64,000 nt of DNA from the NCBI RefSeq assembly GCF_006345805.1, contig NC_043014.1:37882001-37946000 (forward strand). The letters are read 5' to 3'. This DNA comes from Octopus sinensis. Taxonomy: Eukaryota. The number at the start of each line of letters is the position of its first letter. Position 1 is the stretch's first letter. Positions 6,374 to 57,858 of the stretch are shown here, piece after piece. The notes under the pieces are model-generated. The model saw nothing but the letters and a program-made list of their open reading frames with translations, ran no database searches and had not been told where the DNA came from. The translations under genes were made by a program, and so were the position numbers.

Positions 6374-7484
6374 CATTTATACTGGTTGTTTCGACTAAAC
6401 GTGACAGCTTGCATAAAAGGAAAAGAAAACAGAATAGCACAGCCAGGAATAAAAGTATTTTACTAATATCAAAAAATATCAACTAGATCAGTGGTTCCCA
6501 AACTTTTTAAAGTCGCAACCCACTATTTATCACACCAGTTTATGACGACCCACTTAAGTCTTGAACTATTTCGATAGACAGCAGTTAATCAAAGCTAATG
6601 CGTAATTTTATAACTTTTTGCGACCCACTAATGCGTAATTTTATAACTTTTTTGCGCCCCCCATCTGTGGGTCGCGACTCATAGTTTGGGAACCACTGAA
6701 CTAGATTATGACTGGGAGATAACAGTTTACACAAGGTAACTACCCTCAGAGTCCACTCCAGATTGAGACGGCTCCGGAACTTGGCGCATACGCTCCTCAC
6801 AGTCTCTGGGAAGATTTTCGAACACCTCCTGATCTTGGCCACCAGCTTGGCTTTGGTGTTGCAGGTAGAGCGGTTGGTGTCTTTCTCAACTGCATCCCAC
6901 ACAAAGTAATCAATGAGATTACATTCCACAGAATCGAGAGGCCAGAAATTGGGGCTGGGGAAGTCGTAGAAAGTATTTGACAACCACTTCTGAATTTCAC
7001 CGAAGGTCTGGTAAGGAACCGAATCCTGCTGCCATACATACGACCTTCGAGCAGCAATCCTCTCCAGCCAAGGTTTGACCACAATCTTCAATAGCTTCCC
7101 ATATCCATCTGAAGTGAGCCTAAGGCCCAGTTCATCAGTGGTGGACGAACTCCAACATGCGGACACAGTCAGAATGCCCGCCGTATCCTTTTCTACTGAC
7201 CACAGCTTCGTAGTCTCCGTTGCAGCGTTTACAGTGTTCACAAAGCGTTGAACAGTAACCATAATGTCGATATTTTAATACCTGGTTTGAATCATCATGA
7301 TTCAGAATACTCTTTGCTGGTAGTCATATGGCTTCCAGTCCTCTATATCAGCTAAATTTTTCTCAACAACGACTTTAATCTTTATGCTCTCCAAAGAAGC
7401 CATTGATTGTTCACCAATACATCAATCTATTCCAAGAAAAGGGAAACATAAAAATCGTCAAATTTTACCCGAACACCCTCTCTA
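6374..7484 (-). mobile_element. Decayed Tc1/mariner (maT-like) transposon with nested hAT MITE
   Basis: YVWQQDSVPYQT...FWPLDSVECNLIDYFVWDAVEK; degenerate TIRs near 6374 and 7484. Confidence 0.8.
6489..6698. mobile_element. hAT-type MITE
   Basis: TIR CAGTGGTTCCCAAACT / AGTTTGGGAACCACTG; 8-bp TSD AACTAGAT. Confidence 0.9.
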
Positions 7485-10747: not shown

Positions 10748-12390
10748 ATATATAATCTGTGTGTGTGTACATATATATATATATAGAAATTACTACGATG
10801 ATCCGGTTCTTGACTGAGACTGAGGGGTTCGAATGTCCTGTCCATGTTTATTGTATCGTCTTCTATGAGTTATACGTTCTTGGCATGTTGTATTTTTCTA
10901 CATACCTTAATTATATAATATATATGTACACACACACACACACATATATAAATAAGGAAAGGAATCTGAAAATGCAAGAGTCTTCAAAAAGTATTTATTA
11001 ACCTAACCGGTTTCACTTATTTGAAAAGATTTTCAAAAGTAAAGTGTGAGGTTTTGTGTATCCTCTGTAGTGTCAAAAACTAGTTTACACGAATATATTT
11101 CAATCGAATAAAACAGAGTCTTTGACAAGAAGATAAAATATGTAACAGACCATTGAAAGTTTGGAGTTTTGCAATTACAAACAGAGTTGCAATTCTTCTG
11201 TATAAAATCTTCCTTTTATGTAAAAATGATAAATATTAATGATATATCTTCTAAATGCTCTGACTAACGCAACGCATACGCATTCACACGCACACACACA
11301 TACGCGTACACATACGCCCTAACAAGCGCAACACACGCACATACACACGCACATACACGCATACAAGCACATACAAGCACACATACACACATACACGCAC
11401 ATACAAGCACACATACACACGCATACACACACACAGCACCCTATAACACACATAGACATACGCATACACCTGTATACATGCACACATACACACACCACTC
11501 TGAAAAATGATCACAGACACATGCACAGCCATACACGCACACGCATACACACATACTCACACACACCGCCATGACAACCACAAAACACACACGCACACAC
11601 ACAAATAGAACGCCTAAATACACGCACATTCGTTCACACACACCACCACACACACAGAAACCCCCGCTACCCACATTTCCCAGAAAAATACATACACATA
11701 CCCTTACACGCAAATATACACTATTCTTTACTTATAAGTCACACATATAAACGCACACAATACCTTTTTATTAATCGTCAACTACATTGTGACCTGTGAT
11801 CATTAGCCACCGATACTGCTTTTACACCTGAAAACGAATACTAGATGACATTGGCATTTAAGGGATATATCATTAACATTTATCATGTTTTGGATAAAAG
11901 GAAGATTTTATACAAAATAATTGTAACTCTATTTATAACTGCCAAACTCTAGCCAGATGCAAGACCCTTAGAAGTCAGATCCGAGAACTTTAAATGGTCT
12001 GTTAGATATCTTATTTTCTTGCCAAAGACTCTATTACTTGATCGGCATATATTCATGTAAACTAATTTTCATCTCCTATCACTATAAAAAGTTTTATTAT
12101 TTGATCTGGATGTTTTTATGTAAACTATTTTTGACTCATCACAGGGGCTACACAAAGCCTCAAAACTTTTCTTATCATTGTCAAAGACTCTATCACTTGA
12201 TTTGAATACATTTTTGTAAGTTAATTTTTGATACCATAGAGGATTCATAAAGCCTCACACTTTAGTTTTGAAAATCTTTTTAAATAACTGAAACCGGTTA
12301 AGTTAATAAATATTTTTAAAAGACTCCTGCATTTTCAGATTGTTTTCCATATATTTTTACTCCTGCGGTAACACCCAACTTTACTTTGTG

Positions 12391-27837: not shown

Positions 27838-30197
27838 TGTTTGTGTGTCTGTGTTTGTCACCCCAAGATCGCTTGGCAACCGATGTTGGTGAGTTTATGT
27901 CTCCGTATAGTTGCGGGGCTCGGCAAAAGAGACCGATAAAATAAGTACTAGGCTTAAGAAATAAGTTCTGGGGTCGAGCTGTTCGGTTAAAACTCTTAGA
28001 GACGGTGCTCCAGCATGACTGAAGTTCAGCGACCAAAGCAAGTACGAGATACAAGATATTTTATTGAGACTAACGAAGCTCAATTTTCTTTAAAAAAAAT
28101 TTCCATTCTGAATTACTATAATCGGAATCTCGTCAATGCATCCTTACATAAACTGGTCTTTTTAGGCAGTGTTCATTTATATCTACTTTCACGATAATCA
28201 ATAGGATAATTAGAGACCGTGTTCATTAATGAAACTGTCGTAGACAGTTCCACAGAAACGGTTTTATATTGTTTTGCTGACAACGTTTATTCTGCCTAAG
28301 TTTTCGTAATTTTCAACGAGCAATAATCACGCCTCGGATAAGTCTCCCTGGCAATGATATCACCTCTGCGTAAAGCTTCATACCAGACCATATCCCCACT
28401 AAAAAAAAAAAAAACAAACAAAAAGACTGATCTTCTATATGAGTCAATATACAGGACATATATCATCACTAAAAAAAAAAATACAATAAAAAAAAAACTG
28501 ATCTTCTATATGAGGAGTCAATATACAAGACACTAGAAGAGTCTCGGCTTCCTGTTGCGTTGCAGGATCGGAAGTAGATACTTCAGAAAATTCACGAAGA
28601 TTTTCCTCGGATTCAAAATAATTTCATATGACATAATGGGATGGAGGGATGGATGGAGGGGATTATAAGTGGAATACCTCTAATCATACAACACGTATAT
28701 TATACTTTTTTACTCTTTTACTTGTTTCAGTCATTTGACTGCGGCCATGCTGGAGCACCGCCTTTTAGTCAAGCAAATTGACCCCCAGGACTTATTCTTT
28801 GTAAGCCCAGTACTTATTCTATCGGTCTCTTTTGCCGAACCGCTAAGTTACGGGGATGTAAACACACCAGCATCGGTTGTTAAGCGATGTTGGGTGGGGT
28901 GACAAACACAGACAAACAAAATACACACACACACGCATATATATACATATACATATATACGACGAGCTTCTTTCAGTTTCCGTCTACCAAATCCACTCAC
29001 AAGGCTTTGGTCGGCCCGGGGCTATAGTAGAAGACACTTTGCCCAAGGTGCCACGCAGTGGGACTGAACCCGGAACCATGTGGTTGGTAAGCAAGGTACT
29101 TGCCATACTGCCACGCCTGTGCCTATGCCACACATCCACTCCTGCGCCTATGCCACACAGCCAAACAGAAACAAGTCTGACTTTATGATACTCGTGTGTT
29201 GATAACCATAAGTAAAAGATGGCCGCTGGATCACTACCACGTAACAAATCATTATCAGACAGTGGTTCTATATCTTTCAGAGTGCAGAGCCGTTTCATAG
29301 GATTACATTTTATAAACACAACCTCTACATTTTTGAGAGGTGGGAGGGGAAGACAGATTATTTTAATCAAATAAAAGCTTTTGTCAGCAGCTTATCCTTC
29401 ACGTACCTATTTTTAGATATTTGCATGGATTAATGCCCTCTAATATTATTTTGTTTTTGAAATTACTAAAAAATGATGAGGACATGTACTTATTTCAAAT
29501 TATGGCACAAAGCTAGCAGTTGGTGGATGTAGGGGTGAGTCGATTACATCGACCCGAGTACTTGAGTGGTACTTTATTCTATCAACCTAGAAATAATCCT
29601 TTATTTCTACAGGCTTAAAACCTGAAATTTTGCTGAAGAGACCTAGTCGATACATCGACCCCAACGCTTGAATGGTATTTAGGCGGCGAGCTGGCAGAAA
29701 CGTTAGCGCGCCGGGCGAAATGCGTAGCCGTATTTCGTCTGTCGTTACGTTCTGAGTTCAAATTCCGCCGAGGTCGACTTTGCCTTTCATCCTTTCGGGG
29801 TCGATTAAATAAGTACCAGTTACGCACTGGGGTCGCTGTAATCGACTTAATACCTATGTCTGTCCTTGTTTGTCCCCTCTGTGTTTAGCCCCTTGTGGGT
29901 AATAAAGAAATAGGTATTCATTTCATCAAAATAAGTAAAGGCAAGTGGACATCGGTGAAATTTGAACTCAGAACGTACTGAATCGGAAGAACCGCGGCTA
30001 AGAATTTTGTCATACACGCTAACGATTCTGCTTGCTTGCTACCTTTGAGTTCTTATATAATGGAGACAAAGATGGTTTGAAAATGTGTTTAAAATATAAG
30101 TACCGTACTTAGTCAAAAAATATTTTAGTTCTATTAAAAAATCATGATCCTCTGAGCATTCATTTCCCAGCCCCATAGAACCCCGTCACACATAAAC

Positions 30198-33001: not shown

Positions 33002-33439
33002 CATACGATAGGCTTCTTTCAGTTTCCGTCTACCAAATCCACTCACAAGGCTTTGGTCGGCCCGAGGCTATAGTAGAAGACATTTTGCCCAAGATGCCAC
33101 GCGGTGGGACTGAACCCGGAACCATGTAGTTCATAAGCAAGCTACTTACCACACAGCCACTCCTGCGCCTGTTTAAACTTTATAAATAAATATGTTCTTG
33201 CATTATTCAATATTGTTTTTAAAAAAGAAATCACACTAAATCTGCACAAATGACCACCACCACCGCGATCACATACACCAATCAGCATGACCACTGACCA
33301 CCACTACCACCACCGAAACCGCGCGTAATTCAAAGTTTGAAAGTTCTTCACTTTGATATCAACACGTGCGAAAAAATTTCCCGAAAAAATATGGCTTCTG
33401 CTTATCCAAGTCTAAAAGGAATTAATCACCGCGATGTTG

Positions 33440-33733
33440 CCATCGCCACGGCTACAACAGCAGATAGCATTAATTGGAGGAATTTTTGCCGTGATATATG
33501 TGCAGAATATTATTATGTTGCACAAAACATTAAGCTCGGAGGGCCAAACCGAATTGTAGAGATAGACGAAAGCGCGTTTGTTAGAAGAAAATATAATGTT
33601 GGCCATCGGGTTAAAACGCAGTGGGTTTTTGGCGCTTTAGAAAGAGATACCAGAAGATGTTTTTTAGTGGCAGTGGAAGATCGACAGCGGACACCCTTTT
33701 ACAAATTATACAAGAGCGTATATTGCCTGGTAC
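33440..33733 (+). pseudogene. Merlin (IS1016/ISXO2-like) DDE transposase fragment
   Basis: WRNFCRDIC...LGGPNRIVEIDESAFVRRKYNVGHRVKTQWVFGALER...FLVAVEDR / DTLLQIIQERILPGT (frameshift). Confidence 0.9.
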
Positions 33734-34205
33734 AACCAGATTACAAGTTCAGGTTTATACCTGTAATTATTGGGGCCCTGGGATATGTAGCACACTACCT
33801 AAATACGAATCTTGCGAAATTTGGCTTCTGAAAACCAGAAAGGGGAAAGCTAATTTGAAGACTACAGATCCAATCAATCACTGGAAGCGTAAAAATCTGT
33901 AAAACATTCCAGAAGTTTATCATTTAAATATATATAAATATATATGTCTAGATATGCAGCAATATACATGAGAAGACATACATAAAGCAAACCATACAAA
34001 TTTGCACACATACATACATACATACATACATACATACACACTAACAAAAATATCCAGTTCTTGATATTAAAATTCCAATGAAGGATCCTTGAATGTATGT
34101 TACAAACCGGCTGTCTCTCTATTAGCAAGAAATTTTGAAATAAAACTGAACAATGACATACATACATACATACATACATACATACATACATACATACATA
34201 CATAC
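33734..34205 (+). mobile_element. R4/Dong-like RLE non-LTR retrotransposon 3' end with (CATA)n
   Basis: PDYKFRFIPVIIGALGYV...RLQIQSITGSVKICKTF; 3' UTR shared with 63540-64000 and 25125-25240. Confidence 0.7.
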
Positions 34206-37168: not shown

Positions 37169-37268
37169 NNNNNNNNNNNNNNNNNNNNNNNNNNNNNNNN
37201 NNNNNNNNNNNNNNNNNNNNNNNNNNNNNNNNNNNNNNNNNNNNNNNNNNNNNNNNNNNNNNNNNNNN
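37169..37268. other. Assembly gap (100 N)
   Basis: Run of N. Confidence 1.
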
Positions 37269-37634
37269 TATAGTTTCAGCTGAGCATATAGTATTGAGAA
37301 CAGGCTTTTGCGTATGTTTACATTGCGGTATAATTTCTCGAGATGTTTACGTACGTACATATAGACAGACAGACGTAAAAATAGATAGACAGACAGAAAC
37401 GGGCTCTTTCTATATATATATATAAAACAAAATGAAGTTGTAAGATCCCGCACGAGTGGAAATATATATGAAAGAAGGTTTGAAAATGCAGTTTTAAAGA
37501 TGTTTATTAAACATCTTTAAAATTGCATTTTCAAACCTTATTTCATATATATATATATATATAATATATATATATATTATATATATATATATTATATATA
37601 TATATATGTATGTATAAAAATATATATTATAAAA

Positions 37635-37830
37635 AATACAAAATGGACAAGAACGCAAAACATTAAATAGACGATACAAAAAACGGACGGGTCATTCGAA
37701 GCCTCTAATCTTCAGTCAAGAACCGGATCATCCTCGCAATTTCGGCTGATTAATCTTGAGATTGCTCCGATCTGGCCAGCCCCAAGGAAAAACTAAGCTA
37801 CGAGCATTAGATTTCTTGGAAAAAGGATCG
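37635..37830. mobile_element. Solo terminal fragment of the 41838-42830 family (opposite orientation) in (TA)n
   Basis: CAGTCAAGAACCGGATCATCCTCGCAATTTCGGCTGATTAATCTTGAGATTGCTCC is the revcomp of the direct repeat. Confidence 0.75.
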
Positions 37831-38325
37831 AATATATATATATATACATATATATATTCTTTTATTCTTTTATTTTTTCATTCGTTTCAGTCATTTCACT
37901 GCGGCCATGCTGGAGTACTGCCTTTAATCGAACGAGTCGACCCAAGGACTTATTCTTTGAAAGCCTAGTACTTATTTTATCGGTTGCTTTTGCCGAACCG
38001 CTAAGTTACAGGGACGTAAACACACCAACATCGGTTGTCAAGCGATCGAAGTGGCGACAAACGCAGACGCGCGTGCACACCTACCCACACACATATGCGA
38101 CGGGCTTCTATCAGTTTCCGTGTACCAAATCCACTCATAAGGCTTTGGTCGTCCCGAGGTTATAGTAGAAGACACTTGCCCAAGGTACCACGCAGTGGGA
38201 CTGAACTCGGAACCATGTGGTTTGGAAGCAAGCTTCTTATACAGTGCGCGCGCATATTATATATATATATATATATATATTTATTTTTTTTCCAGTTTCA
38301 GCTCTTGTGCTGTGGCCATGCGGGG

Positions 38326-39362: not shown

Positions 39363-39688
39363 TTTTATGATAATAAGTTTGTACTCAACAAAAATATAGA
39401 TTAAACTCATCAGATAAATGCAAAACTGTTTTTATTACAACTGAACATAAGGCGGCTAGCTAACAGAATCGTACCAGCTGAACACCGGGGGTCAACGTAA
39501 CCGGCTTACCCTGCCTCAGAAATTGCTGGCCTTGTGCCAAAATTTGAAACCATTATAACTGAACATAGAAACAAACAAAAACAGACCGATAGAATAAGTA
39601 CTAGGCTTACAAAGGCGGTGCTCCTGTCCAATGACTGAAAAAATAAAAGAATAAAGAATAAGTATATTATATATAAATACATATATAT

Positions 39689-39746
<58 letters not shown>

Positions 39747-39953
39747 CTAATGATAAATATCAAAGTGAGTTTATACAGTAGCGGTAACACATCGTGACGT
39801 ATATTTTGCCACTCAATATGGCTACCCCCCCTAAGGGGATGCACTGTAGTTTTTAAGCCCCAGGAGGACACACTCCTCCTCCAGCTGGCCATAGACCACA
39901 CTTCTGTGTCCTGTCAGTATTTGCAAAGGGAAGTCATCCTTCCGTCTTCAACT

Positions 39954-40013
39954 TATGATACACACGGACTCGAGTTTCGAGGTATTGCTTCTCGTCAGCG
40001 TGTGACAATCATA
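39954..40013 (-). ncRNA. Type I hammerhead ribozyme, monomer 1
   Basis: Revcomp CACACG-CUGACGA-GAAG-CAAUA-CCUC-GAAAC-UCGA-GUC-CGUGUG; one A.C mismatch in stem II. Confidence 0.85.
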
Positions 40014-40306
40014 GTTTTGTCGGCGAGAATTAGATTTCCTTCACAATACTTATACTTTTTCCAGCGTCCACTGTCGCTGATATTGAAAAAGTGAAATCAA
40101 ACATGAAAATATCAAAGTGAGTTATATATAGCAGTAGCGGTAACACATCGTGACGTATATTTGCCATCTCAATATGGCTACCCCTAAGGGTGGATGCTAC
40201 TGTATTTTTTAAGCCCCAGGAGGACACACTCCTCCAGCTGGCCATAGACACACTTTCTGTGTCCTGTCAGTATTTGCAAAGGAAGTCATCCTTCCCGTCT
40301 TCAACT

Positions 40307-40367
40307 TATGATACACACGGACTCGAGTTTCGAGGTATTGACTTCTCGTCAGCGTGTGACAATCATA
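40307..40367 (-). ncRNA. Type I hammerhead ribozyme, monomer 2
   Basis: Revcomp CACACG-CUGACGA-GAAG-UCAAUA-CCUC-GAAAC-UCGA-GUC-CGUGUG. Confidence 0.88.
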
Positions 40368-40657
40368 TTGTCGCGAGAATTAAGATTTCCTTCACAAATA
40401 CTTATACTTTTTCCAGCGTCCACTGTCGCTGATATTGAAAAAGTGAAATCAAACAATGATAATATATCAAAGTGAGTTATATACAGTAGCGGTAACACAT
40501 CGTGACGTATATTTGTCATCTCAATATGGCTACCCCTAGGGTGGATGCTACTGTAGTTTTTAGCCCCAGGAGGACACACTCCTCCAGCTGGCCATAGACA
40601 CACTTTCTGTGTCCTGTCAGTATTTGCAAAGGGAAGTCATCCTTCCCGTCTTCAACT

Positions 40658-40718
40658 TATGATACACACGGACTCGATTTTCGAGGTATTGACCTCTCGT
40701 CAGCGTGTGGCAATCATA
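40658..40718 (-). ncRNA. Type I hammerhead ribozyme, monomer 3
   Basis: Core intact, stem II GAGG/CCUC; position 15.2 reads A instead of C (GAAAA-UCGA-GUC). Confidence 0.8.
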
Positions 40719-41010
40719 GTTGTCGCCGAGAATTAGATTTCCTTCACAAATACTTATACTTTTTCCAGCGTCCACTGTCGCTGATATTGAAAAAGTGAAA
40801 TCAAACAATGATAAATATCAAAGTGATTATATACAGTAGCGGTAACACATCGTGACGATATTTGCCATCTCAATAGGCTATACCCCTAAGGGTGGATGCT
40901 ACTGTAGTTTTTAGCCCCAGGAGGACACACTCCTCCAGCCATGGCCATAGACACACTTTCTGTGTCCTGTCAGTATTTGCAAAGGGAAGTCATCCTTCCC
41001 GTCTTCAACT

Positions 41011-41070
41011 TATGATACCACACGACTCGGTTTCGAGGTATTGACTTCTCGTCAGCGTGTGACAATCATA
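41011..41070 (-). ncRNA. Type I hammerhead ribozyme, monomer 4 (small indels)
   Basis: Core CUGACGA...GAAAC intact; 1-nt indels in loop III and stem I, possibly sequencing errors. Confidence 0.75.
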
Positions 41071-41357
41071 GTTGTCGGCGAGAATTAGATTTCCTTCACA
41101 ATACTTATACTTTTTCCAGCGTCCACTGTCGCTGATATTGAAAAGTGAAATCAAACAATGATAAATATCAAAGTGAGTTATATACAGTAGCGGTAACACA
41201 TCGTGACGTATATTTGTCATCTCAATATGGCTACCCCTAAGGGTGGATGCTACTGTAGTTTTTAGCCCCAGAGGACACACTCCTCCAGCTGGCCATAGAC
41301 ACACTTTCTGTGTCTGTCAGTATTTGCAAAGGGAAGTCATCCTTCCCGTCTTCAACT

Positions 41358-41415
41358 TATGATACACACGGACTCGAGTTTCGAGGTATTGACCTCTCGT
41401 CAGCGTGGGCACATA
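41358..41415 (-). ncRNA. Type I hammerhead ribozyme, monomer 5
   Basis: Revcomp CCCACG-CUGACGA-GAGG-UCAAUA-CCUC-GAAAC-UCGA-GUC-CGUGUG. Confidence 0.85.
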
Positions 41416-41545
41416 GTTTCGCCGAGAATTAGATTTCCTTCACAAATACTTATACTTTTTCCAGCGTCCACTTTTTCAATATCAGCGACAGTGGACGCTG
41501 GAAAAGTATAAGTATTTGTGAAGGAAATCTAATTCTCGGCGACAC

Positions 41546-41606
41546 TATGATTGCCACACGCTGACGAGAGGTCAATACCTCGAAACTCGAGTCCGTGTGT
41601 ATCATA
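41546..41606 (+). ncRNA. Type I hammerhead ribozyme, canonical (inverted monomer 6)
   Basis: Stem I UAUGAU/AUCAUA + CACACG/CGUGUG with internal loop; core CUGACGA; stem II GAGG/CCUC, loop UCAAUA; GAAA; stem III AC/GU with palindromic UCGA loop; GUC cleavage after 41593. Confidence 0.93.
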
Positions 41607-41837
41607 AGTTGAAGACGGGAAGGATGACTTCCCTTGCAAATTGACAACACAGATAGTGTGTCTATGGCCAGCTGGATGAGTGTGTCCTCCTGGGGCTAAA
41701 AACTACAGTAGCATCCACCCTTAGGGTTAGCCATATGAAATGGCAAAAATACGTCACGATGTGTTACTGCTACTGTATATAACTCACTTTGATATTTGTC
41801 ATTGGTTATATTATTATATATATATCTATATATATAT

Positions 41838-42820
41838 ATCTCAAGATTAATCAGCCGAAATTGCGAAGATGATCTGGTTCTTGACTGATGACTGAGAGCT
41901 TCGAAAGTCCCGTCTGTGTTGTTTTTTTGTCGTCTTCAAAATGTTTCACGTTCTTGTCCCAGTTTGTGTTTTTTTAACGTTTACATATATACACGGCGGC
42001 TACGTACCCTACCTTTTGACCCTATACTGTAAGTATATTACTCTCTAACCTTGGTACGACTCGACTACACTGTCTCTCTTTTTCCCCCCCCTCTCCTACT
42101 TTTCTCTGCCTTCACCTTTGCACTCCCCTTGTTCTATCTCTTTCCCTCTTTTTCTTTCTTCTTCTCCTCCTCTTGTTCTTCCTCTCTTCTTCCCTCTCTC
42201 TCTCTCCTCTTCCTCCGTCCCTCCTCTCCCACATTTCTCTGCCTCTCAGACCTTATACCCCACTTGACCTGTCCCTTTCCCTCTCTTGCTTTCTCTCTTC
42301 ATCTGTCCCTTTCTCCCTTTTGTGCTCACGTGACCAGCTAGCTACTACTGCTGCCTTTTCGCATCAAGTAGTTGGTGTGACCACACGTAATTGTTTGTGC
42401 TCCGTTTGCCTCCTTCAGGCACTTGTTCCACAAGCCAGCCTATACTCAACTCGTCCTGTCGAAAGACGCTTGTCCTGACGTCCTGGTTTTGTTTATTATT
42501 GTTTTTACGTTATTTTGTATTCTTATCCGTGCTATCGTTATTGTTTTTACGTAGTTTTGAATTTTTTTCGAGTGGCATCGTCCGTTTTTCCGTCACTGTG
42601 TGTGTATACTTTTTCGATTTTTCTTCCAGGAATCTAATGCGACTGGCTTAGATTTCCCTTGGCGGGCTGCCCCATTGGAGCAATCTCAAGATTAATCAGC
42701 CGAAATTGCGAAGATGATCTGGTTCTTGACTGATGACTGAGAGCTTCGAAAGTCCGTGTTGTTTTTTTGTGTCGTCTTCAAAATGTTTCACGTTCTTGTC
42801 CCAGTTTGTGTTTTTTTAAC

Positions 42821-42830
<10 letters not shown>
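41838..42830. mobile_element. Direct-repeat-bounded non-coding element (150-bp repeats, period 845 bp) in (TA)n; pLTR-like
   Basis: ATCTCAAGATTAATCAGCCGAAATTGCG...GTTTACATAT at 41838-41990 and 42683-42830; related solo ends at 4660-4775, 10790-10900, 37635-37830, 49714-49830. Confidence 0.75.
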
Positions 42831-42896
<66 letters not shown>

Positions 42897-43849
42897 GCAT
42901 ATGCAATATATATATTTATATATGTTGTGTGTGTATGTGTGTGTATGTGTACAATGACCTACAATAACGTTTTAGGCAGAGTTATAAAAGGCAATGTTAA
43001 TTAACTTCTAATAATTTCATGATAAAATATCAACATGAATGGAAAATTGTCTCATTCTTTTATGGGGCTTTCTGTACCTAATATCATGGCTTTGAACCAA
43101 TTTGGCTCGGATTTGATTGAATTATTGATGACCGATTAATCATTGTTCTTCCACTCTTCGGTCAATGTTTCATTTAGCTCCATAATTGATATAATTTTCA
43201 ACGACTGTGTTTGTAAACTTCTAGCGAACATATTCCCGCATGTCTGCTAATGGATTAAGACCATGTTTTTTGTGCAACCCATTTCAGTTGCACAAAAACG
43301 CCTAGCAGCCAGAAGTGGTGAACGTGCTCAGCAGGAACACTTCTGGGACTTGCCTTGAAACAAGGTTTGGATACTGCATTTAATGCCTACTTTCTAAGCC
43401 TTAATTCTTTAATTCTATGTGTGTGTGTGTGTTTCTTCCAGACCACCACTAGACAACCTGATCCACAAAAAAAAAAAGACCGATAGAATAAGTACCAGAC
43501 TTTAAAAAAGTTCTGGTCGAATTTGACTAAACCCTTTACGGCGTCAGTGTTTCAAGTTGAAACACTGACGACCATTAACTTGATAGTTTTCAACTCAGAG
43601 GAGGCGGTAGTGACAGCAGTAGCAATGGTATAGAGGTGGTGGTCGTGGTGGTGGAATTACAGTGCACCTACTCCCCATGAAGGATTAACAAGGTAATGTC
43701 TTAGTGAGTGTAATTGTAAAGTGATGCAGATAAATCTGGTAATTCGTGCTTGGCGTTGAAGTGTTCATCGAAGGCCAACCTCGCTATCAGCACGTCAGTT
43801 GCAAAGCCTTTCCTAAGCGACTCTTCTCGCTTTCTTACTAAATCGTCCT

Positions 43850-46344: not shown

Positions 46345-46659
46345 ATGCTTATGTATGTATTCGTATGCATTATATATGCCTTGCACTTCACGATACAGCC
46401 TTCTGTTTTCTTTTCTTTTCTTTTTTTCCCCATATTCTTATCTAAATAAGTTAAAATGCGTGACCTGTCTGACTTATAAAGAGGACACATTGTTGGAGCG
46501 TAGATGGCTGGAGTTTCAGTTATTAAAACTGATGAATTTTTTAATGTTCTGAGAGATACGGTCACTAAAAACATGTTGGCATTCCAAAAGCAAGGTAAAA
46601 TCAGCTCTGCAAAGCATAAATTTGAACTGAAGGAAAGCTCACGCAACGGAGAATACAGA

Positions 46660-46990
46660 ATAGTGAAATGTGCTGCTGGAAGACACTATGTCTGGCAACA
46701 GGGCTCTGCACCATGCCACACAAGCAGAAGAACCCAGTCATGGCTGTCAAACAATTTCTGCTACCACATCACCCCTAACATCTGGCTACCTAACTCCCCA
46801 GACTGCAACCCACTTGATTATTATGTGTGGGGTGCAGTTGAACGAAAGAACAACAAAACTTGTAATACCAAAGAAGAATTGAAGGCAAGGATTGCGGCAT
46901 CATTCACCAACTTAAACAAGGAGGTCGTCCAGAAGAGTTGCAGGAGATTCCGAAGTCGTCTGGAGGCCATGGTTGAAGGACACTTTTGGT
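46660..46990 (+). pseudogene. maT/Tc1-like transposase C-terminal fragment
   Basis: YVWQQGSAPCHTSRRTQSWL...WLPNSPDCNPLDYYVWGAVER...CRRFRSRLEAMVE. Confidence 0.9.
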
Positions 46991-47759
46991 CATATAAATC
47001 TATGTGTCCCTAAAATGATTGGTCAGTTTTTGATCATAAATTCGCTTTCACCCATTTGCAACACTAACATCAACAATGTGCAATAAATATCTATCATTTT
47101 TTTCTACTATAATCACAATGTCTAAAATTTTGCAGGGCGATTACATCGGCCCCAGTGCTTAACTGGTACTTATTTTATCAACCCCAAAAGGATAAAAAGG
47201 CAAGTCGACATCGGCGGTATTTGAACTCAGAACGTGAAGCCGGTAAAATGCCGCTAAGTATTTTTTCTGGTGTACTGATGATTCTGCCAGCTAGCCGCCA
47301 TAATGTACTATAAAATATTGATTTCACACTTTGGTACGAGGCCAGCAATTTAGGGGGAGGTGGTAAGTTTATTACGTCTACCCCAGTGTTCAAGTATTCA
47401 ACTGGTCCTTAATTTATTGCCCTCGAAAGGATTAAAGACAAAGTCGATCCCACCGAAATTTGAACTCAGAACGTAGAAGCCATGGAAATGCCTATTTCTT
47501 TACGACCCACAACGGGCTAAACACAGAAAGGACAAACAAGGACAGACAAACGGATTAAGTCGATTACATCGACCCCAGTGCGTAACTGGTACTTAATTTA
47601 TCGACCCCGAAAGGATGAAAGAGCAAAGTCGACCTCGGCGGAATTTGAACTCAGAACGTTACGGCAAACGAAATACAGCTACGCATTTCGCCCGGCGTGC
47701 TAACGTTTCTTCTACCAGCTTGATTCCCAAATAAATTTGGTGGGTGGGGTACAAAGCCA

Positions 47760-56950: not shown

Positions 56951-57858
56951 ATTTGGTTATCCCATAAATAATGCGGTTTTCAGTTGCCAGAACTAAAAGT
57001 CGGAGTGGGGTGGGATAAACTGTCTGCATCAACTTACTATAAGAGCAGGTAGTAATTTTACTTTGTCCTTATTGTTAGTGCAAGTTTTGAACAGTGCAAT
57101 TCAAATTTAACAGTTATTTTTTAAAGCTATAATGGAAGCGATAAAGGAGCATATTCGGCATATTTCGCCTTATGAGTTCAATAAAGGCAACAATGCAACA
57201 GAAAGTGCAGGGAATATTTATGTAGTATATGGGCATCGGACAATAAGCGTAAGCCAGTGTCAAGAGTGGTTCCAGAAATTCCGAGCCGGAAACTACAGCC
57301 TTGAAGACGAGCCTCGTCCTGAAAGATCTGTAGAGCTCGACGAGGATGTCCTGCAAACCCTGGTGAAACAAAATCCCATTGTAACTGCTGAGAACTATCA
57401 GAGAAGCTTGAATTTGGTCATTCAATCAGTCATTCAAGTCAGCGCTAGAAGAAAAACGACCATCTTTGGTTTCAAGACGAAAGGTATTCATCCATCAGAA
57501 TAGTGATCGGCCACATACAGCGAGGATGACAGTCCAAAGGCTGGAGCAGTTTAAATGGGAAACAATGCCCCACCCACCATATTCACCGAACATTGTCCCA
57601 TTTGATAAGCATTTATTCTGCAGTCTTCAAAATTATTTGGACGGAAAATATATAAATTTTGTAGACAAGGTCAGAGTAGTACTGGAGGAGTGTTTTTCGT
57701 CACAGACAAGTAAATTTTGGAAGAGGGGTCTTGCAAGTCTACCGGATAGATGGAAGAGCATTGTAAAAAATGAAGGTGAGTATATTTTCGATTAAAAATT
57801 TATCTTAATTTTGAAAAATAAAAGTATAAAAAACCGTTTATTTATGGGATGACCCAAT
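56951..57858 (+). mobile_element. Internally deleted mariner (DD34D) element
   Basis: TIRs TTGGTTATCCCATAAATAATGCGG / CCGTTTATTTATGGGATGACCCAAT; HTH part (YEFNKG...WFQKFRAGNYSLEDEPR) and HPPYSPNIVPFD part. Confidence 0.9.

What the first reader, a model, noticed from the sequence alone, without database searches (positions are those of the whole stretch)
39747..41805. Hammerhead-ribozyme retrozyme array: ~351-nt monomers predicted to self-cleave into (circular) RNAs
Seen: six ~351-bp units in a (TA)n tract, each with a type I hammerhead. The best copy (41546-41606) has core CUGACGA, stem II GAGG/CCUC, GAAA, stem III AC-UCGA-GU, a GUC site, and a bipartite stem I (CACACG/CGUGUG plus UAUGAU/AUCAUA around an internal loop). 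Cleavage-site spacing is 353, 351, 353 and 347 nt. The rest of the monomer has more hairpins (GGAGGA/UCCUCC, GGGAAG/CUUCCC, ACCC/GGGU) and no stable ORF. Established: non-LTR retrozymes in animals are tandem non-coding repeats of a few hundred nt with one type I HHR each, yield circular RNAs, and are thought to be mobilised by Penelope-like elements. Inference: this is such a family in a cephalopod-like genome. I do not know of a description of it, but could not search.
Basis: partly seen in the sequence, partly recalled or inferred. Interest (0 to 1): 0.92.

Follow-up and report, generated by a model that had tools for sequence, protein, structure and literature searches.

The report
Octopus hammerhead-ribozyme tandem repeat (retrozyme)
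A 2-kb block of 352-bp non-coding repeats in an octopus genome carries one self-cleaving "hammerhead" RNA motif per repeat. It fits the known animal "retrozyme" class of small mobile elements, so it is a real but fairly ordinary new example, and its layout looks like an insertion made by a Penelope-like retrotransposon.

Summary
A 352-bp tandem repeat (39749-41472, 4.9 units) is followed by one inverted unit (41473-41806), inside a (TA)n tract. Each of the six units has a type I hammerhead with the full catalytic core. Five lie on the minus strand and one on the plus strand. Rfam Hammerhead_1 scores four of them at 29-32 bits, just under its 34-bit threshold.

The window is from an Octopus genome. 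The monomer is non-coding, 43% GC, and folds much better than shuffles (z = -6.1). Helix III is only 2 bp with a palindromic loop. Folding predicts an inactive monomer and a "double-hammerhead" dimer, as in newt and axolotl repeats.

In ribozyme polarity both outer ends stop at the same monomer position next to (TA)n. The two arms meet head-to-head at 5'-truncated ends with 4-nt microhomology. This is the published insertion architecture of Penelope-like elements.

Most differences between units are 1-nt indels, which probably reflect assembly noise.

I could not test cleavage, expression, circular RNA or other genomic copies. Verdict: a new member of a known kind (metazoan non-LTR retrozyme). 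I found no description of it for cephalopods in the searchable literature. Interest is modest.

The parts
39663..39746 (.). Left (TA)n tract, the putative target microsatellite
   Evidence: TRF period 2, 43.5 copies; sequence
39749..41472 (-). Arm A: 4.9 tandem units with the ribozyme on the minus strand. In ribozyme polarity it runs from consensus position 247 (5'-truncated, at 41472) through four full units to consensus position ~217 (at 39749). Units are 41472-41371 (partial), 41370-41024, 41023-40671, 40670-40320, 40319-39967 and 39966-39749 (partial).
39961..40004 (-). Hammerhead copy 1. The core is intact. Stem II has an A.C mismatch (GAAG/CCUC) and loop 2 has a 1-nt deletion.
   Evidence: RF00163 29.3 bits
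40314..40358 (-). Hammerhead copy 2. The core is intact and stem II has an A.C mismatch.
   Evidence: RF00163 29.8 bits
40665..40709 (-). Hammerhead copy 3. Core and stem II are intact. Helix III has C15.2->A, which breaks the palindrome. Rfam does not hit it.
41019..41061 (-). Hammerhead copy 4. The core is intact and stem II has an A.C mismatch. There are 1-nt deletions in helix III and at the first base after the cleavage site. Rfam does not hit it.
41365..41409 (-). Hammerhead copy 5. Core, stem II and helix III are intact. The distal part of helix I is disrupted (UAUGUGCCCACG).
   Evidence: RF00163 29.9 bits
41469..41472 (.). Head-to-head junction of the two 5'-truncated arms, with 4-nt microhomology (CACT). 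The surrounding palindrome (41436-41525) gives spurious mir-184 hits.
41473..41806 (+). Arm B: one inverted unit of 0.95 unit length, running from consensus position 226 through 352 to position ~220, with the ribozyme on the plus strand.
41555..41599 (+). Hammerhead copy 6, the only copy with all helices and the core intact. Predicted cleavage is 3' of C41593. The extended helix I spans 41544-41609.
   Evidence: RF00163 32.2 bits, E=1.5e-5
41806..41841 (.). Right (TA)n-rich tract

Best explanation
This is a genomic array of a non-autonomous, non-coding retroelement of the metazoan 'non-LTR retrozyme' class, in an Octopus genome.

What the sequence shows:
- 352-bp units, each with one type I hammerhead.
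- An RNA predicted to be long, mostly base-paired and branched, in which helix I of the ribozyme extends into the body of the molecule.
- A 2-bp helix III closed by a palindromic loop.
- An insertion made of two arms in opposite orientation. Their 3' ends (in ribozyme polarity) stop at the same monomer position against (TA)n, and their 5'-truncated ends are joined by microhomology.

Inferred mechanism:
1. A transcript across the minus-strand arm carries a ribozyme every ~352 nt.
2. Neighbouring ribozymes pair through the self-complementary ACUCGAGU segment into double-hammerheads. [quoted passage not shown]
3. A host RtcB-type ligase circularises these RNAs.
4. The reverse transcriptase/GIY-YIG endonuclease of a Penelope-like element copies such RNA at a nicked (TA)n site by target-primed reverse transcription. 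Priming on both DNA strands gives the long tandem arm plus the short inverted arm.

This particular copy looks partly decayed in the assembly. Many of the apparent defects are 1-nt indels that may be assembly errors.
For: Array and period.

Hammerhead: complete core in all six units and RF00163 hits at 29-32 bits with full-length model alignment. Loop 2 (UCAAUA) and the asymmetric internal loop in helix I resemble the Rfam type I consensus, whose loop 2 is CAAAUA.

Non-coding.

Composition and fold: GC 42.6% and 65% of bases paired in the circular fold. The ribozyme strand folds to -118.6 kcal/mol with z=-6.1. The antisense strand gives -102.9 with z=-4.6.

Dimer prediction: the canonical single hammerhead is -14.3 kcal/mol, against -20.2 for a non-catalytic minimum-energy fold, and helix III costs +1.5. 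Co-folding two copies gives exactly the double-hammerhead as the minimum-energy fold, at -45.1 against 2 x -20.2.

Insertion architecture:
- The outer ends lie at consensus positions ~217 and ~220.
- The inner ends lie at consensus positions 247 and 226 with CACT microhomology.
- (TA)n lies on both sides, while perfect (TA)>=6 tracts cover only 2.2% of the window.

Literature:
- The class is defined, with mussel units of 350-390 bp, in PMC7229834.
- A weak helix III and dimeric action are described in PMC7761336.
- Penelope-like insertions form partial tandems plus an adjacent inverted 5'-truncated copy, and favour (TA)n, in PMC8557442.
- Octopus vulgaris has 31 recently active Penelope-like families in PMC13282606.
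Against: - All hammerhead hits are below Rfam's gathering score (34), and two copies are not hit at all.
- Single-molecule and alignment folds do not produce helices II and III.
- There is no covariation, because the copies are nearly identical.
- In the assembly only copy 6 is defect-free, and it sits alone on the opposite strand. A minus-strand transcript would carry only imperfect ribozymes.
- No second locus of the family was found in the 64-kb window or in ~49 kb of other Octopus DNA. Mobility is therefore inferred from architecture only.
- No Penelope-like ORF is in the window.
- Three linked substitutions define two unit types that alternate along the array. A single homogeneous monomeric circle copied by rolling-circle reverse transcription would not give this pattern.
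- Expression and cleavage are untested.
Confidence: 0.78

Rival explanations
1. A locally amplified minisatellite that grew out of a fragment of a Penelope-like element, such as its pseudo-LTR. It expanded by unequal crossing-over rather than through an RNA circle, and the hammerhead is an inherited passenger. The locus would not be an independently mobile retrozyme.
For: - Two unit haplotypes (GGCGAC/UGC/GAGG versus GCCGAC/UGU/GAAG) alternate 1,2,1,2,2 along arm A. This fits DNA-level higher-order repeat dynamics or a multimeric template.
- No other copies were seen in the DNA I could reach.
- The 2026 preprint proposes exactly this local-amplification route.
Against: - Both outer ends stop at the same monomer position (consensus ~217-220) in opposite orientations. 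For an inversion of part of a local array I estimate a chance of about 1-3%; this is my own rough figure, not a computed one.
- The arms are 5'-truncated at different positions and joined by microhomology, as expected from reverse transcription.
- The hammerhead has a long helix I and loops of the classical retrozyme/satellite type, not the minimal variant reported for Penelope-like elements.
Confidence: 0.14
2. A dead relic: the repeat once encoded a ribozyme, but this locus no longer yields self-cleaving or circular RNA.
For: - Five of the six motifs carry a stem II mismatch, a helix III change or a helix I disruption.
- The scores are below the Rfam threshold.
Against: - Substitution-only identity between units is 98.5-100%, and the differences are mostly 1-nt indels in homopolymers. 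This pattern points to long-read assembly error rather than old age.
- The catalytic core is intact in all six units.
- This explanation overlaps with the best one; it concerns the activity of this locus, not what the element is.
Confidence: 0.05
3. An assembly artefact: a fold-back or chimeric long read produced the inverted unit, or a collapsed or expanded repeat.
For: - Indel-rich differences between units.
- A 100-N scaffold gap 2.5 kb upstream, at 37169-37268.
Against: - The junction is not a mirror palindrome. Arm B starts 21 nt further 5' in the monomer than arm A.
- Arm B differs from the adjacent unit by 8 scored mismatches in 216 aligned positions, some of them next to indels.
- Arm B ends in unique flanking sequence rather than in more repeats.
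- The tandem repeat itself does not depend on the inverted unit.
Confidence: 0.03

Closest known systems
Metazoan non-LTR retrozymes (Cervera & de la Pena 2020, PMC7229834), especially the Mytilus galloprovincialis retrozyme
   Same: - Tandem non-coding units of a few hundred bp; the mussel units are 350-390 bp and this one is 352 bp.
- One type I hammerhead per unit.
- GC below 45%.
- A highly self-paired predicted RNA.
- A mollusc host whose genome also holds Penelope-like elements.
   Different: - The sequence is species-specific, and I could not fetch a mussel sequence to compare it with.
- Invertebrate retrozyme ribozymes are reported to cleave well as single motifs. This one is predicted to need dimers.
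- Expression and circular RNA are shown for the mussel and are untested here.
Ribozyme satellites of newts and axolotl (satellite 2, Ax353), Schistosoma Sm-alpha, cave-cricket pDo500
   Same: - The classical type I hammerhead with a very short helix III whose loop is self-complementary, so two ribozymes form a double-hammerhead. The Rfam consensus ACGCGCGU corresponds to ACUCGAGU here.
- A similar loop 2 (CAAAUA against UCAAUA).
- Unit size of about 330-350 bp (satellite sizes are from my own knowledge).
   Different: - A different phylum and no sequence similarity outside the ribozyme core.
- Those arrays reach thousands of copies. Here only a 6-unit locus was seen.
Penelope-like elements (PLEs) and their pseudo-LTR hammerheads
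   Same: - The insertion architecture: a tandem arm plus an adjacent inverted 5'-truncated copy, 5' truncation, and a (TA)n target (PMC8557442).
- Hammerheads that act as dimers (PMC7761336).
   Different: - No RT/GIY-YIG ORF lies in or near the array.
- There are five to six short units rather than two pseudo-LTRs around a 3-4 kb body.
- Ribozymes of Penelope-like elements are described as minimal variants without loop-loop contacts. This one has a long helix I with an internal loop and a 6-nt loop 2.
Plant LTR retrozymes
   Same: Non-autonomous, non-coding, ribozyme-flanked units that give circular RNA.
   Different: Plant retrozymes have type III hammerheads, LTRs, PBS/PPT motifs, ~700-nt units and high GC. 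None of these applies here.

Membership tests
Metazoan non-LTR retrozyme | Short tandem repeats (about 150-450 bp per unit, dimers to multimers) | tested here: met
   Period 352, 4.9 direct units plus 0.95 inverted unit
Metazoan non-LTR retrozyme | One type I hammerhead with a complete catalytic core in each unit | tested here: met
   CUGACGA / GAAA / GUC and helices I-III in type I topology are present in all six units. Some copies carry helix defects.
Metazoan non-LTR retrozyme | Non-coding; no LTR, PBS or PPT | tested here: met
   No frame is open through the 352-nt consensus, and no terminal long repeats flank the array. PBS and PPT motifs were not searched for specifically.
Metazoan non-LTR retrozyme | Low GC (<45-50%) and a highly self-paired RNA | tested here: met
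   GC 42.6%, 65% of bases paired, z=-6.1 against dinucleotide shuffles
Metazoan non-LTR retrozyme | Self-cleavage of the transcript | not testable with these tools
   Prediction only: the dimeric double-hammerhead is the minimum-energy fold of two copies, and the monomer prefers a non-catalytic fold
Metazoan non-LTR retrozyme | Accumulation of unit-length linear and circular RNA in tissues | not testable with these tools
   No transcriptome was searchable. The peptide-based search of public assemblies found nothing.
Metazoan non-LTR retrozyme | Dispersed multi-locus family (evidence of mobility) | tested here: inconclusive
   No other copy in the 64-kb window or in ~49 kb from O. sinensis, O. 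vulgaris and O. bimaculoides. This is far too little DNA to decide. The architecture of this locus suggests retro-insertion.
Metazoan non-LTR retrozyme | Co-occurrence with autonomous Penelope-like elements in the same genome | not tested
   None in the window. The literature reports 31 recently active Penelope-like families in O. vulgaris (PMC13282606).
Rfam RF00163 Hammerhead_1 | Score at or above the curated gathering threshold (34 bits) | tested here: not met
   The best hit is 32.2 bits and the others are 29.3-29.9. There is no hit in gathering mode.
Rfam RF00163 Hammerhead_1 | Conserved core nucleotides and a three-helix junction with helix I open | tested here: met
   Full-length alignment to model positions 1-45 with every invariant position matched
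Penelope-like element (autonomous) | ORF encoding RT plus a GIY-YIG endonuclease between pseudo-LTRs | tested here: not met
   No ORF of 100 aa or more lies wholly inside the array; the longest is 99 aa, and a 131-aa ORF only overlaps its left edge and the (TA)n tract. Ten chosen window ORFs of 120 aa or more gave only a Mos1 HTH domain in Pfam.
Penelope-like element (insertion signature) | Partial tandem plus an adjacent inverted 5'-truncated copy, with a microsatellite (TA)n target | tested here: met
   Arm A and arm B lie head-to-head. Their common 3' end is at consensus position ~217-220, and (TA)n lies on both sides. The feature is described in PMC8557442.

The most novel reading that the evidence does not exclude
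The locus may be a preserved integration footprint that shows how animal retrozymes are mobilised, which published work leaves open. Two cDNA arms are primed from both strands of a nicked (TA)n site. Both start at the same RNA position (consensus ~217-220, which is not the ribozyme cleavage site) and are joined by microhomology. That is Penelope-type target-primed reverse transcription.

The strict 1,2,1,2 alternation of two unit variants, of which only one has an uninterrupted stem II, would further mean that the copied template was a dimeric or multimeric RNA rather than a monomeric circle. This would match a ribozyme that can only cut as a dimer.
Probability: 0.3. Interest if true: 0.55.

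Novelty: new member of a known kind. Interest (0 to 1): 0.35.

Why it matters
The finding adds cephalopods to the animals whose genomes carry ribozyme-bearing tandem retroelements. It predicts an abundant ~352-nt circular RNA in octopus tissues, which is easy to test.

The more useful point is the locus architecture: a shared 3' end, a (TA)n target, and an inverted 5'-truncated arm. This is the kind of evidence that could tie invertebrate retrozymes to Penelope-like integration. The 2020 review says no motif points to the mobilising element (PMC7761336), and the 2026 preprint examined vertebrates only.

A genome-wide survey of such junctions in Octopus would test this directly, because Penelope-like elements are reported to have been recently active there.

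Tried and rejected
- Default Rfam scan of the window: only a U4 snRNA passes threshold, and no hammerhead does. The hammerheads appear only in E-value mode. In the whole-window E-value run the best copy was even lost to the filters.
- Exact-pattern scans for the family-specific ribozyme (CTGACGAGARGTCAATACCTCGAAAC) in metagenome, viral and prokaryote collections: zero hits, as expected because these hold no animal genomes.
- Search of the 5.8-billion protein collection with concatenated six-frame peptides of the consensus, hoping for spurious ORFs called on other copies or transcripts: nothing.
- Tc1/mariner ORF search for organism identity: ambiguous, with crustacean and one Octopus hit. Its best relative's contig (L001) shares no repeats with the window.
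- ISXO2-like ORF search: this settled the genus as Octopus.
- Three Octopus contigs (L002-L004, ~49 kb): no retrozyme copy.
- mir-184 and mir-51 hits at 41436-41525: these are the junction palindrome, so I rejected them.
- Hammerhead look-alikes CTGATGA...GAAA at 41885-41914 and 42730-42760: stem II cannot form and the Rfam models do not hit them. They belong to an unrelated interspersed repeat.
- RNAalifold on the six ribozyme copies: no covariation, and it prefers alternative hairpins.
- My own dinucleotide-shuffle script timed out. I used the shuffles of strand folding instead.
Full report
**1. What is in the sequence**

Tandem Repeats Finder reports a 352-bp period from 39749 to 41472, with 4.9 copies, 93% matches and 5% indels. 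Repeat and alignment analysis shows that the array does not simply continue. At 41472/41473 it flips, and 41473-41806 is one further unit in the opposite orientation. The block lies between a (TA)n tract at 39663-39746 and a TA-rich tract at 41806-41841. The monomer occurs nowhere else in the 64-kb window.

**2. The ribozyme**

- All six units contain CUGACGA...GAAA...GUC. Five are on the minus strand and one on the plus strand.
- In gathering mode Rfam reports no hammerhead in the window.
- In E-value mode RF00163 (Hammerhead_1, type I) aligns end to end with four copies: 41555-41599(+) at 32.2 bits, 41365-41409(-) at 29.9, 40314-40358(-) at 29.8 and 39961-40004(-) at 29.3. The gathering score is 34, and E-values are 1.5e-5 to 1.4e-4 for the 2.3-kb search.
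- The two unscored copies have a C->A change or a 1-nt deletion in helix III.
- The topology is type I. Helices II and III are closed by short loops. Helix I (CACACG/CGUGUG, a UGC/U internal loop, then AUGAU/AUCAU and beyond) is closed by the remaining ~290 nt.
- Loop 2 (UCAAUA) and the asymmetric helix I loop resemble the Rfam type I consensus.

At 32 bits a lone hit would not be convincing genome-wide. The case rests on the conjunction with the tandem unit, the helix I extension and the context.

**3. The ribozyme is of the dimer type**

Helix III is only A-U and C-G, closed by UCGA. The segment ACUCGAGU is self-complementary.

- For the best copy the canonical single-hammerhead structure is -14.3 kcal/mol. 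Helix III itself costs +1.5.
- The minimum-energy fold, at -20.2, is a different, non-catalytic structure.
- RNAalifold on the six copies also chooses alternative hairpins for helices II and III, and shows no covariation.
- Co-folding two copies gives the textbook double-hammerhead as the minimum-energy fold, at -45.1 against 2 x -20.2. It has an 8-bp intermolecular helix III, intermolecular helix I and both stem II hairpins.

This is the behaviour described for newt and axolotl repeats and for many type I motifs (PMC7761336; PMC7229834). It remains a prediction, not a demonstration.

**4. The unit as an RNA**

- The consensus is 352 nt and 42.6% GC, with stops in all six frames.
- As a circle it folds to -116 kcal/mol with 65% of bases paired. 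Positions 1-50 pair with positions ~270-318, so helix I continues into a long, branched, quasi-rod structure.
- One genomic unit folds to -118.6 in ribozyme polarity (z=-6.1, 0 of 100 shuffles as good). The antisense gives -102.9 (z=-4.6).
- The G.U asymmetry favours the ribozyme strand as the functional RNA.

**5. State of the copies**

Substitution-only identity between the four full units is 98.5-100%; two units have no substitution between them at all. Yet each pair differs at 10-19 gap positions, mostly single bases in homopolymer runs. That ratio is typical of unpolished long-read assemblies, not of biological divergence. Several apparent ribozyme defects, which are 1-nt deletions in loop 2, in helix III and at the base after the cleavage site, may therefore be artefacts.

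Real, linked substitutions define two unit types:

| Type | Variants | Stem II |
|---|---|---|
| 1 | GGCGAC / UGC loop / GAGG | uninterrupted |
| 2 | GCCGAC / UGU loop / GAAG | A.C mismatch |

The table's three sites lie in the 3' part of the unit; a fourth variable site, A or G at consensus position 156, changes in step with them. Read in a frame that starts at consensus position ~220, the types run 1,2,1,2,2 along the long arm. The inverted arm is type 1.

**6. Insertion architecture**

- In ribozyme polarity the long arm ends ...CTTTGATATTTATCATT|AGATATATTATATATA. The short arm ends ...CTTTGATATTTGTCATTGGT|TATATTATTATATATA.
- Both arms therefore stop at consensus position ~217-220, which is not the cleavage site, and both run into (TA)n.
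- Their inner ends are truncated at different positions (consensus 247 and 226). They are joined through a 4-nt microhomology, CACT, at 41469-41472.
- The structure is not a mirror palindrome. It has a 21-nt offset, arm B differs from the adjacent unit by 8 scored mismatches in 216 aligned positions (some of them next to indels), and it has unique outer flanks. This argues against a fold-back read artefact.
- A shared 3' end with variable 5' truncation is the signature of target-primed reverse transcription.
- A tandem arm with an adjacent inverted 5'-truncated copy, and a (TA)n preference, is the published hallmark of Penelope-like element insertions (PMC8557442).
- Perfect (TA)>=6 tracts occupy 2.2% of the window. 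Landing in one is therefore suggestive but not rare.
- The two arms differ at the three linked sites. They are not two copies of the same terminal unit of one linear template, so at least two template molecules, or a heterogeneous multimer, are implied. This last point is inference.

**7. Host and surroundings**

- An ISXO2-like transposase ORF (33337-33831) matches only Octopus bimaculoides and O. sinensis proteins, up to 94% identity.
- The window shares many interspersed repeats at 83-94% identity with O. sinensis VCDQ01004827 and O. vulgaris OX597814. The window is octopus DNA.
- The neighbourhood is repeat-rich. It holds mariner/Mos1 remnants, SINE-like repeats, abundant microsatellites and a 100-N gap at 37169-37268. 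It holds no reverse-transcriptase or GIY-YIG ORF.
- The 150 bp just right of the array (41842-41991) is a 5'-truncated copy of an unrelated ~320-bp interspersed repeat. That repeat is also found at 42598-42908, at 37539-37848 and in O. sinensis.

**8. Comparison with what is known**

- The class was defined by Cervera & de la Pena (PMC7229834). It covers tandem 150-450-bp non-coding units with type I hammerheads and low GC, expressed as 170-400-nt circular RNAs. It was shown in a coral, the mussel Mytilus (350-390-bp units) and the axolotl, and seen bioinformatically in many invertebrate phyla.
- Mobilisation by Penelope-like elements was proposed there. A 2026 preprint supports it for vertebrates through similarity to the pseudo-LTRs.
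- The giant-squid genome paper lists 235 Hammerhead_1 loci without further analysis (PMC6962438).
- A 2026 Octopus vulgaris repeat annotation reports 31 recently active Penelope-like families and does not mention hammerheads, ribozymes or satellites (PMC13282606).
- My literature searches found no description of an octopus or cephalopod retrozyme. The library is incomplete, however.

**9. Verdict**

This is a new member of a known kind. It differs from what is reported for most invertebrate retrozymes in having a dimer-type ribozyme. The locus also carries an unusually legible Penelope-type insertion footprint.

Self-cleavage, circular RNA, copy number and the identity of the mobilising element remain open, and none could be tested with the tools at hand. 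Interest is modest (0.35). It would rise if a genome-wide survey confirmed the shared 3' end, the (TA)n targeting and the dimeric unit structure.

Noticed in passing
window 28250-28377 (-): A U4 spliceosomal snRNA match passes the Rfam threshold (56.6 bits against 46). It is single-copy within the window. I did not examine whether it is a gene or a pseudogene.
   Followed up: partly
window 41842-41991, 42598-42908, 37539-37848 (-), 10786-10954; L002 15455-15786: An interspersed repeat of ~320 bp whose 3' end runs into (TA)n. A 5'-truncated 150-bp copy abuts the right edge of the retrozyme array. It contains a CTGATGA...GAAA look-alike (41885-41914, 42730-42760) that the Rfam hammerhead models do not hit.
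   Followed up: partly
window 39749-41806: Units differ mainly by 1-nt homopolymer indels, with 0-5 substitutions against 10-19 gap positions per pair. This suggests unpolished long-read assembly error, which may affect the whole window.
   Followed up: partly
window 39967-41472: Two unit haplotypes, linked at consensus positions 297, 313 and 329 (plus 156), alternate 1,2,1,2,2. Only type 1 has an uninterrupted stem II. This may reflect a dimeric higher-order unit.
   Followed up: partly
window 41436-41525: Sub-threshold mir-184 and mir-51 hits on both strands are caused by the palindrome at the head-to-head junction. They are not a miRNA gene.
   Followed up: yes
window 33337-33831 (+), 6585-7262 (-), 46504-47013 (+), 57132-57503 (+): Transposon remnants: an ISXO2-like transposase fragment (up to 94% identity to Octopus proteins) and Tc1/mariner fragments, one of which has a Mos1 HTH domain.
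   Followed up: partly
window 37169-37268: A run of 100 N (a scaffold gap) lies 2.5 kb upstream of the array.
   Followed up: no
whole window: In permissive mode, (TA)n and (CA)n microsatellites produce very many sub-threshold Rfam 'miRNA' hits (mir-297, mir-3149, mir-466, mir-1277 and others). All are far below their gathering scores.
   Followed up: no
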